A stretch of DNA of 63,296 nt, filler included, from Hyphochytrium catenoides (Eukaryota > Protista > Hyphochytriomycota), in NCBI GenBank assembly GCA_900088475.1. It is 15 parts of 15 records of this genome, joined end to end, with 100 filler letters (N's around TTAATTAATTAA, not from the genome) between each part and the next. Parts side by side here need not be neighbours in the genome. Positions count along the whole stretch, not along the records: positions 23,047 to 32,534 come from FLMG01000751.1; 14 more parts are not named here. The stretch is one strand, 5' to 3'. Below, one piece after another: positions 23,371 through 26,600 of the stretch. The position numbers were made by a program, and so were the translations under genes. The notes below the pieces were generated by a model. That model saw only the letters and a program-made list of their open reading frames with translations, made no database searches and was not told the DNA's origin. Positions within the stretch are counted from its first letter, which is position 1; each line of letters starts with the position of its first letter.

Positions 23371-23660
23371 TTACCCCCATGGCCATTTTACAGTGTAGCC
23401 GCCCTGTTTGCTGTTCTCCTTCGGGCATATCACGTCAATATTGTCGACGGAGGCGACGTCCTGGAGAGTCCTGGTAGTGTTCGATGCCCATAGGGCGCTA
23501 ACCGGGATCTTGTGCTCCAGGTTGAAGCTCATCCCGTAGTTCATCTCCGAGAAGTGAATGTGGGTGTTTAGTAGTTGCTGGAGCTTCCGTGTAAACTCCT
23601 CTTTCGGTGCGAATGATTCGATTTCTTTGAGAGTGTAAGCAATGCCGTGCTCTGCCATCT
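23371..23660 (-). CDS. HNH endonuclease domain (C-terminal part of the pPolB polypeptide after a -1 shift at about 23658)
   Basis: MNYGMSFNLEHKIPVSAL..ASVDNIDVICPKENSKQG matches the HNH pattern NYG..w.iDH.iP.s..N.q.l...eN..K known from large-DNA-virus HNH proteins. Confidence 0.75.
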
Positions 23661-26600
23661 CGATTTTATACTCTTGCACCAGTTGCGCCACATCTTTATC
23701 CGTTGAGAGGCGTCAGAGTATTGTTCGGTCCGAACTTTGCCGTGACAGTTCTCGTCACAATGGTAGTGTGAACAGATTACTATCTCCTGTTCTTTGCGAG
23801 CAAGGTACTGTAGTCTCTTGTGAAGGTGTTGTTGGCTGAATGCAAGTGGGCAGTGGCCGTGTTTGTGAACGTAGAAGGTATGGTATCTATTGAAGTCTTG
23901 AGCATCACTGCTGCGAGCACAGACGATGCAGATCGCTTCCTGGGAGCAATGATGATGAGACCAGTAGCCGCTGCTGTCGATGGTGTTGCGAACCATGTCT
24001 CTCTGTAGTCCGCTGCGTGAGCACTGTGCGCAGAATACTAGTCGCTCTGTCTTACACTTGCTTTCCTTATCGCACTTATGTCTACAACCTTTGAAGTATC
24101 CGTGGGGTTTGCAAGTCGTCGGGGATAACCAATAAGATTTGCGATCCAGCATCGTCAACGACTTGAACTCACGTTGAGTCTGCATTGTTACACCGCCGTT
24201 CGTCATGTCAAACTGTTTCTTGAAAATTGTATTGTCGACCGCGAGTTGTGCGAGCTCAAGATATGTTTGCAGGAATTGCTCGTGCGTGGTTTTGAGATCT
24301 GCGTTGATGACGCCTTTTGCTTTACGAGTGTCTGTACCATCGGCAAACTTCATCGAGCGAAGTTTTGGGGCGAGCGGCCACCAACTCTTCGATGTTAGCT
24401 TCGAGTTTAAATTTCCCCGGAGTGATGTCATTACTGCCGTTCGCGAAGAACTGGGTCCTTAAAGGGTCACTGAACTTGCTCAGGAAATCATCGTAGGAGT
24501 CTGCCTTCACGTTGACATATACGCCGTCAGTATCTATGTAAAGTAGTTCGAGGTCTTCCTTTGAGAACGTTGTCATAAGACAATTAAAAATGAAATCGAA
24601 AAGTAACAATTTTGCCATGGACAAGATCCCACTACCTAGATACCGCGGAGTTTTTAAGGTTACCGGAGCTTTGCAGCTGACCATGAGCGAGGTTGCTGAT
24701 AGTTGTTTTACATCGACAACCTGCTTACCCTGTGCTCTCTTCAGAAAGTCTGTGGCATCGCTGACGATGACCTCCTTCGTGTACTTCGACTCGTCCATTA
24801 ACATACGACCGTAGACAGAATTTTGAATGAGTTTATAGTATGCTTTGAGTGACTCCCCTTTTCTGATGAGTTCCTCGTCACCCTTACGTTCACCTTCAAC
24901 GATCATGACTTGGGCTCCACGTCGTTTCTCAGTGTAATAGTCGACGAAATTCTTAAAGACGAGTTCAAACCGCATCGGTAGATCTTCTTCACTCTATTAA
25001 GCGTCACCATGTCGTTCACGAGCAAATATACGAGGACGTAACCAGGTATGACATAGTCCGGTTTGGGGTCAAGAGTTAGCAAGAGCAAGTCTTCTCCCTT
25101 GGTGGGTTTCTTGTTGATGGCGCTTTTTGACGCGGTTCCCAAAGGGTCCGAGATTACTGGGTGGCGCATCCCGCGTAGGTAATACAGGTAGAGTCAGTCT
25201 GTCTTTCCGGTCATCGCTATAGTAAAGGTCGCATTGGACAAGACATGACATGAAGCCACCATCGTCATTAAGATCATTCATGACTCTGCCTGTCGCTTCT
25301 TTCATACATGAGCTTGCGCAAAAGGTCTTTCGCTCGGTCCGTCTTACTGAATGAGATAACGCTCCACTTAAAGTCGTTGCACTGCTTGTGATCCTCTATG
25401 AAGTCGCACATTGCTTCGCCTTTGTCGTCAGTCGGGAATACCAATAGAGGTCTTGCCATGGCCCAAGGATACATCGCATTTGCATCTAAACCAAAGATCT
25501 TGCGGGACTTTGTCGCTTTTGAGTAGTGGTTCAGCACGATGCAGACCCCGCCGTAGATTGACGACCTTATAAAGACAGAAGCTTTCTCGTTTGGGATAGT
25601 ATGAACGGTTGTCTTAAGAAACGAGCGCTTGAAGACATTGTCACCGAGCTGAGAGATCGTCAAATTATTGAGGACCTCGACGCCGCTATCACGAAAGACT
25701 GTATCTCGATAATTTGCAACAGCGTCCATGAGCAACTCGACGTCCTGGAGACAATAGCGTTCGGTGTACGCTTTCATGTTGGGCTTGGGTAATGAGTTCC
25801 ATATCTCGAGGGCTTTGTCTTCTGCGTCGCCCCAAATGCCAATTGGAAAGGTGGTCTCACTAAACTGTGCGGGATCCTTCAAGTAGTTGTAGTTGAACGG
25901 TAGCTTCTCTTTACTGATGCCATTTCTACGGGCAAAGTCCTCCAAAGAACCACCATTTTGCTTAAAGATGTCCATAAAGACGTAGGTAATAGCTCTCTTG
26001 TGCTTCCGGCTGTAAGCGTTCCATTGCAGCTCCAGGATCCCTGACGCTTGATTGACCACTCTCCTGACTTTCTTAATATGGCTCAAGAGAAACGTCATAT
26101 CGTATCTGCCTGAATTATAGCCAAGGACGGGGACGGTGATCTGCCTGTGAAGCAGCTCCTTCTGGAGTTTTCGGTAACGACAGTCATCCCTGCAGTCACT
26201 CGCCTGCTCGCATTCACAGAGATGTTGGTATGCGGCAACTTTAGCAGTTCTCTCCTCCAAGATGTTTGTTAACAAGACGTCGGCAAGGTCGTAATGCAAC
26301 CAGTCAAGAAACCTCCGCCCCACCTCTTTCTTTGTCGGTACCAGAGGGTTAACCTTCGACGTGTTGGTATAGACAAAACTCTGCTGGTAAGAACGCTCCA
26401 GTGCAACTATTATCGTGTGAGGGTGGTGGACCTGTTTGTGATCTAATATCGATTCGATGTCGAAGCAGATGTAGGTCTCGTGCTGATATTGCTTGCCGGT
26501 CAGCTGCTCGTAGACTTTGTGGATTGGAGAGTATATGAGGAGGCCCTTGACGTACTTGGGATTTATAGTGACCGTCCGTCGGTTCTGGCAGGTGTTCAAA

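What the first reader, a model, noticed from the sequence alone, without database searches (positions are those of the whole stretch)
23371..24431. Polinton-type pPolB extended by a Cys/His-rich domain and a C-terminal HNH nuclease: candidate new polymerase-nuclease fusion family
Seen: pPolBs normally end just after the DxKR..PxG motif, but here DRKSY..PHGY continues in the same ORF into about 150 aa with CxxC/H pairs (CAQC..HHHC, CIVC..HKHGHC, CSHYHC..CH). After one -1 shift at about 23658 it enters the segment carrying an HNH motif (NYG..LEHKIP..DNIDVICPKENSK). The divergent copy at 50860-51390 conserves the Cys/His domain. It also reads through the shift point in one frame (KMRDNWFTSGRDRCVQHGIALQMSELRAIAPKEAF vs KMWRNWCKSIKSR/MAEHGIAYTLKEIESFAPKEEF), although its HNH core itself is lost. 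Inference: the fusion is ancestral to this family, and the tethered nuclease could act in excision, nicking, homing or competition with other viruses. I do not recall this architecture being described, but novelty is unverified.
Basis: partly seen in the sequence, partly recalled or inferred. Interest (0 to 1): 0.9.

Follow-up and report, generated by a model that had tools for sequence, protein, structure and literature searches.

The report
Polinton polymerase with conserved C-terminal tail
This is the end of a frameshifted DNA polymerase gene of a Polinton-type virus-like element; the polymerase carries a real, conserved cysteine/histidine-rich tail, but no test could show that the tail is an HNH nuclease, and polymerase-nuclease fusions of this kind are already published.

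Summary
The quoted letters are in the sequence. The interval is the 3' end of one long protein-primed family B polymerase gene (23371-28618, minus strand). The gene is read here in six collinear pieces, which means five frame changes and no stop. After the thumb comes a Cys/His-rich stretch (14 Cys and 14 His in 151 residues), then a terminal domain of about 80 residues with conserved His and Asn positions.

The only relative found among 5.8 billion clusters and 1.84 billion representatives is P0001, an intact 1646-aa protein. It carries the same tail in one reading frame, so the tail belongs to the polymerase and is under selection.

The HNH label is not demonstrated. Pfam, NCBIfam, PADLOC and PDB give nothing. 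PHROGs gives one sub-threshold endonuclease VII hit, and both AlphaFold models are unusable.

Polinton polymerases with inserted HNH or VSR nuclease domains are already published, so the kind is known. This tail is at most a sequence-orphan variant of it. Interest is moderate to low.

The parts
23371..28618 (-). [quoted passage not shown] It is broken: six collinear pieces in three frames, so five frame changes and no in-frame stop.
   Evidence: Pfam DNA_pol_B_2 scores 65.4 bits against a cut-off of 25.8. All six pieces match successive parts of P0001 in order. Exo I-III and Pol A-C motifs are present and align with P0001.
23371..24095 (-). C-terminal extension beyond the thumb: a Cys/His-rich stretch followed by a conserved terminal domain of about 80 residues carrying the HNH-like motif. 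It ends at the stop codon.
   Evidence: Cys/His counts come. The terminal domain is 40% identical over 78 residues to P0001 1557-1634, and the thumb is 39% identical. No family profile matches.
28796..29443 (-). Remnant of a DDE (rve-type) integrase, upstream of the polymerase on the same strand.
   Evidence: Pfam rve E 0.064 and NCBIfam IS481 transposase E 6e-6, both below their cut-offs.
30966..31844 (+). Intact 292-aa ORF with two Cys-Cys..His..Cys motifs at its N-terminus. It is a neighbour of unknown family.
   Evidence: ORF. No hit in Pfam, NCBIfam or PDB beyond chance-level zinc-finger hits.
23310..23377 (.). Three 17-nt direct repeats spaced 24-27 nt apart, straddling the end of the polymerase gene.
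   Evidence: Repeat family D1; sequence read.

Best explanation
The interval is the 3' end of a long TP/vOTU-type protein-primed polymerase gene of a rare, deep-branching Polinton-like lineage, present here as a frameshifted copy. Beyond the thumb the enzyme carries a genuine, selected C-terminal extension. It has a Cys/His-rich, probably zinc-binding stretch of variable length, then a terminal domain of about 80 residues.

I take the terminal domain to be, most likely, a very divergent His-Me-finger (HNH-like) nuclease that the polymerase captured, as other polinton polymerases have captured homing-endonuclease domains. Tethered to the replicase, it would nick or cut DNA close to where the polymerase acts.

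Shown: the gene's identity, the extension, and its presence in one reading frame in an intact relative. Inferred: zinc binding, the nuclease fold, and any role.
For: - The gene and its catalytic motifs are established.
- The tail is present in one ORF in the intact P0001. It is at least as conserved (39-40% identity) as the polymerase overall (about 32%).
- The invariant positions of the terminal domain are polar ones typical of active sites: Glu-His-Lys, Asn-x-Asp, Glu-Asn-Ser and Gly-Gly.
- PHROGs gives a sub-threshold hit to endonuclease VII, a His-Me-finger enzyme, exactly over the motif region (E 0.16).
- Published precedent raises the prior. HNH and VSR domains are inserted in polinton pPolB2 (PMC10748475). 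Diverse homing-endonuclease domains occur at different positions of polinton pPolBs, and HNH or GIY-YIG domains at the C-terminus of Tlr1-like helicases (PMC11071308, PMC5499653).
Against: - No HNH-type model matches either tail piece or P0001 in Pfam (E up to 10), NCBIfam or PADLOC.
- PDB sequence and profile searches are empty.
- The endonuclease VII hit is not significant and does not recur in P0001.
- AlphaFold models of both pieces are unusable (mean pLDDT 38 and 35), so no fold comparison was made.
- The conserved motif rests on two sequences only.
- The gap between the His and the first Asn is longer than I would expect for a simple beta hairpin, and the protein ends soon after the last Asn. 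Both points are my own judgement.
Confidence: 0.4

Rival explanations
1. The extension is a non-catalytic zinc-binding C-terminal domain. It would hold DNA or a partner protein, much as the C-terminal zinc fingers of eukaryotic family B polymerases do. On this reading the HNH-like motif is a chance resemblance.
For: The Cys/His clusters sit directly after the thumb. No nuclease profile matches. This lineage carries further Cys-rich stretches elsewhere in the polymerase. Two C-terminal Zn fingers are a hallmark of eukaryotic family B polymerases (PMC4104785).
Against: No match to the polymerase zinc-finger families of Pfam either. The most conserved part of the tail is the Cys-poor terminal domain, whose invariant residues are polar. 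The Cys/His stretch varies in length by about 88 residues between the two members.
Confidence: 0.35
2. The last piece is a separate small gene that overlaps the end of the polymerase gene, not part of the polymerase.
For: In this copy it lies in another frame and has possible start codons of its own.
Against: P0001 reads from the thumb through the terminal domain in one frame. The same gene has four more frame changes inside conserved polymerase regions, so a frame change here needs no special explanation. No stand-alone relative exists among 1.84 billion representatives.
Confidence: 0.05
3. The tail is a new polymerase-nuclease fusion family without precedent.
For: The tail has no detectable relative apart from P0001. 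I found no paper describing a C-terminal zinc-rich domain on a polinton pPolB.
Against: pPolB fusions with HNH and VSR nuclease domains are published, and nuclease identity is not shown here.
Confidence: 0.1

Closest known systems
P0001 (unnamed 1646-aa protein from a Logan assembly)
   Same: Same architecture from the N-terminal region through Exo, Pol and thumb to the Cys/His cluster and terminal domain, all in one ORF. Identity is 30-46% piece by piece.
   Different: It is intact. It lacks the insert of about 88 residues with the two CxxC..HxHC modules. Its host and genomic context are unknown.
pPolB2 of nematode and oomycete Polintons with an inserted HNH domain; marine nematode and mollusc pPolB2 with a VSR domain (PMC10748475)
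   Same: A Polinton protein-primed polymerase fused in one polypeptide with a small nuclease domain.
   Different: There the HNH domain was recognised by HHpred and by structural superposition on PacI. Here no profile recognises the tail. None of those proteins came back in my searches. The position of their domain is not stated in the text I could read, and no direct comparison was made.
Tlr1-like helicases (pPolB-S1H fusions) of polinton-like viruses with C-terminal HNH or GIY-YIG domains (PMC5499653, PMC11071308)
   Same: A nuclease domain appended at the C-terminus of a large replication protein of the same virus group.
   Different: Those proteins lack the exonuclease domain and carry a helicase. 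Here the polymerase is complete and has no helicase.
C-terminal zinc fingers of eukaryotic family B polymerases (PMC4104785)
   Same: Cys-rich metal-binding modules placed directly after the polymerase domain.
   Different: Those are RNA-primed cellular polymerases. Pfam finds no match to their zinc-finger families, and here His is as frequent as Cys.

Membership tests
[quoted passage not shown] | Profile match above the curated cut-off | tested here: met
   65.4 bits against a cut-off of 25.8 for the longest piece. P0001 scores 63.4 bits, and PHROGs DNA polymerase gives E 1.9e-18.
[quoted passage not shown] | Exo I-III and Pol A-C motifs | tested here: met
   All six are present and align with P0001.
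Polinton/Maverick element | rve-type integrase next to the polymerase | tested here: inconclusive
   Only a 215-aa remnant with sub-cut-off matches.
Polinton/Maverick element | Capsid proteins, packaging ATPase, maturation protease and terminal inverted repeats | tested here: inconclusive
   None was found in the 9.5-kb piece, but the piece is cut at both ends.
Polinton/Maverick element | N-terminal terminal-protein and vOTU domains on the polymerase (PMC11071308) | tested here: inconclusive
   Conserved Cys and His columns lie at the expected place, but there is no OTU profile match.
HNH / His-Me-finger nuclease | Match to any HNH-type profile | tested here: not met
   Pfam up to E 10, NCBIfam and PADLOC give none. 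PHROGs endonuclease VII appears only at E 0.16.
HNH / His-Me-finger nuclease | Beta-beta-alpha metal fold | tested here: inconclusive
   The AlphaFold model has mean pLDDT 38 from a two-sequence alignment, so no fold search was run.
HNH / His-Me-finger nuclease | Conserved His, Asn and Asn/His triad | tested here: inconclusive
   The three positions are identical in the window copy and P0001, but only two sequences exist.
Eukaryotic PolB C-terminal zinc-finger domain | Match to the Pfam polymerase zinc-finger families | tested here: not met
   No such hit for the 287-aa piece or for P0001.
pPolB2 clade with HNH insert (PMC10748475) | Sequence relatedness of the polymerase and of the nuclease domain | not tested
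   The comparator sequences were not fetched (see referred steps). None appeared among the search hits.

The most novel reading that the evidence does not exclude
The tail is a previously unrecognised, sequence-orphan His-Me-finger nuclease with its own zinc module, fixed at the C-terminus of a complete TP-vOTU-Exo-Pol polymerase. The lineage is so rare that only two members exist in public protein collections. This would be an independent, differently placed capture of a nuclease by polinton polymerases.
Probability: 0.3. Interest if true: 0.5.

Novelty: new variant of a known kind. Interest (0 to 1): 0.33.

Why it matters
If the tail is a nuclease, it would be a further, independent case of a Polinton replicase acquiring a DNA-cutting domain, at a new position and too divergent for current profiles. 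That would add to the published picture of repeated nuclease capture by these polymerases, and it would give a new family for profile libraries. If it is a non-catalytic zinc domain, it parallels the C-terminal zinc fingers of cellular family B polymerases. In both cases the lineage itself is unusual: it has one relative at about 32% identity among billions of proteins.

Tried and rejected
Searches that found nothing useful:
- Homologue searches found only P0001: the longest piece, the P0001 tail and the 106-aa piece against all representatives. The 287-aa piece found nothing.
- Structure prediction of both tail pieces gave pLDDT 38 and 35.
- PDB searches with a piece, with P0001 and with a profile were empty.
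- tblastn of the terminal domain against phages gave one chance hit in a RusA gene.

Abandoned:
- I began collecting phage HNH comparators for a profile-profile test. I dropped it because the annotated HNH protein itself matches no Pfam HNH model, which makes it a poor comparator.
- A tandem DNA repeat behind the two CxxC modules: none found. At protein level the two modules are only modestly alike (18 of 2000 shuffles reach the score).

- Reading the tail through its frame change as one query.
- Any list of break places.
- A check of whether the frame changes fall in homopolymer runs.

Full report
**What is there.** On the minus strand of the piece, six overlapping ORFs run from 28618 down to 23371. 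The longest (1114 aa) matches Pfam DNA_pol_B_2 at 65.4 bits against a cut-off of 25.8. All six pieces match successive parts of one protein, P0001, in collinear order (tblastn outer bounds and counts). They are therefore one protein-primed family B polymerase gene of about 1750 codons, read in three frames. That makes five frame changes, and no in-frame stop is needed. Exo I-III and Pol A-C motifs are all present and align with P0001. Upstream on the same strand lies a weak DDE/rve integrase remnant. Further on, on the other strand, is an intact 292-aa ORF of unknown family. No capsid, ATPase or protease gene and no terminal repeat is visible, but the piece is only 9.5 kb and is cut at both ends.

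**The observation.**
- The quoted letters are present.
- After the thumb the same ORF continues into a stretch with 14 Cys and 14 His in 151 residues (18.5%), against 1-5% in the other pieces.

**Is the tail real?** Yes.
- P0001 is the only relative among 5.8 billion clusters and 1.84 billion representatives. It is an intact 1646-aa protein.
- P0001 reads from the thumb through a Cys/His cluster into the same terminal domain in one frame.
- Identity is 39% over the thumb and 40% over 78 residues of the terminal domain, against about 32% for the gene as a whole. The tail is therefore a selected part of the polymerase.
- Known polymerase profiles stop near residue 1429 of P0001, which leaves the tail unexplained.
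- The two members differ in one respect. The window copy has about 88 extra residues holding the two CxxC..HxHC modules, which resemble each other only modestly. Only the flanking clusters are shared.

**Is it an HNH nuclease?** This is not demonstrated.
- Pfam (E up to 10), NCBIfam and PADLOC give no HNH-type or zinc-finger match for either tail piece or for P0001.
- PDB sequence and profile searches are empty.
- PHROGs gives one sub-threshold hit (E 0.16) to endonuclease VII over the motif region. It does not recur in P0001.
- AlphaFold models built on two-sequence alignments have mean pLDDT 38 and 35, so I ran no fold search.
- What remains is a short motif whose polar positions are identical in two sequences, plus the published precedent.
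- I put the nuclease reading at about 0.4 and a non-catalytic zinc-binding C-terminal domain at about 0.35.

**What is known.**
- Jeong et al. (PMC10748475) describe polinton pPolB2 proteins with an inserted HNH domain in terrestrial nematodes and oomycetes, and with a VSR domain in a marine nematode and molluscs.
- Krupovic et al. (PMC11071308) state that polinton pPolBs contain diverse homing-endonuclease domains at different positions. They also state that Tlr1-like helicases end in HNH or GIY-YIG domains (see also PMC5499653; PMC12220804).
- The same paper describes N-terminal terminal-protein and vOTU domains. This fits the conserved Cys and His columns I see in the N-terminal 690 residues.
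- C-terminal zinc fingers are a hallmark of eukaryotic family B polymerases (PMC4104785).
- A polymerase-nuclease fusion in Polintons is therefore not new as a kind. This tail would be a new, sequence-orphan variant at a new position.

**State of the copy.** Five frame changes and no stop in about 1750 codons, with every catalytic motif kept, fit either a young copy or indel-type assembly errors. Only reads can tell which.

- I did not look up or scan for the DNA of P0001's contig, of this piece's own source contig, or of other relatives.
- I did not fetch published Polinton polymerases as comparators. The host is unknown and the element may be a virus-like element of an animal.

Noticed in passing
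window 26550-28618 (minus strand), N-terminal part of the polymerase gene: About 690 residues precede Exo I. Cys and His columns and a CxxC..C zinc-ribbon-like pair are conserved with P0001. This fits the terminal-protein plus vOTU domains published for polinton pPolBs, although Pfam gives no OTU hit.
   Followed up: partly
window 23371-28618 (minus strand): A further Cys-rich stretch lies between Exo I and Exo II in both the window gene and P0001. This lineage therefore carries Cys-rich stretches at three or more places.
   Followed up: no
window 23371-28618 (minus strand): All five disruptions of the gene are frame changes and none is a stop, while every catalytic motif is kept. That points to a young copy or to indel-type assembly error.
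   Followed up: partly
window 23310-23377: Three 17-nt direct repeats spaced 24-27 nt apart straddle the end of the polymerase gene. Their role is unknown.
   Followed up: no
window 30966-31844 (+): An intact 292-aa ORF with two Cys-Cys..His..Cys motifs at its N-terminus has no family in Pfam, NCBIfam or PDB. It points away from the integrase and polymerase genes.
   Followed up: partly
window 28796-29443 (-): Only the C-terminal part of a DDE/rve integrase core is recognisable. ORFs further upstream give no family match.
   Followed up: partly
window 23078-23109 and 30555-30586: Two purine-rich (GA) tracts, 75% alike, lie near the two ends of the piece. This is probably low-complexity chance.
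   Followed up: no
L001 13660-14019 (Mycobacterium phage prophiT49-1): A CDS annotated as HNH endonuclease, with 286 phage records holding relatives, matches no Pfam family at E 0.01. The annotation rests on something other than Pfam.
   Followed up: no
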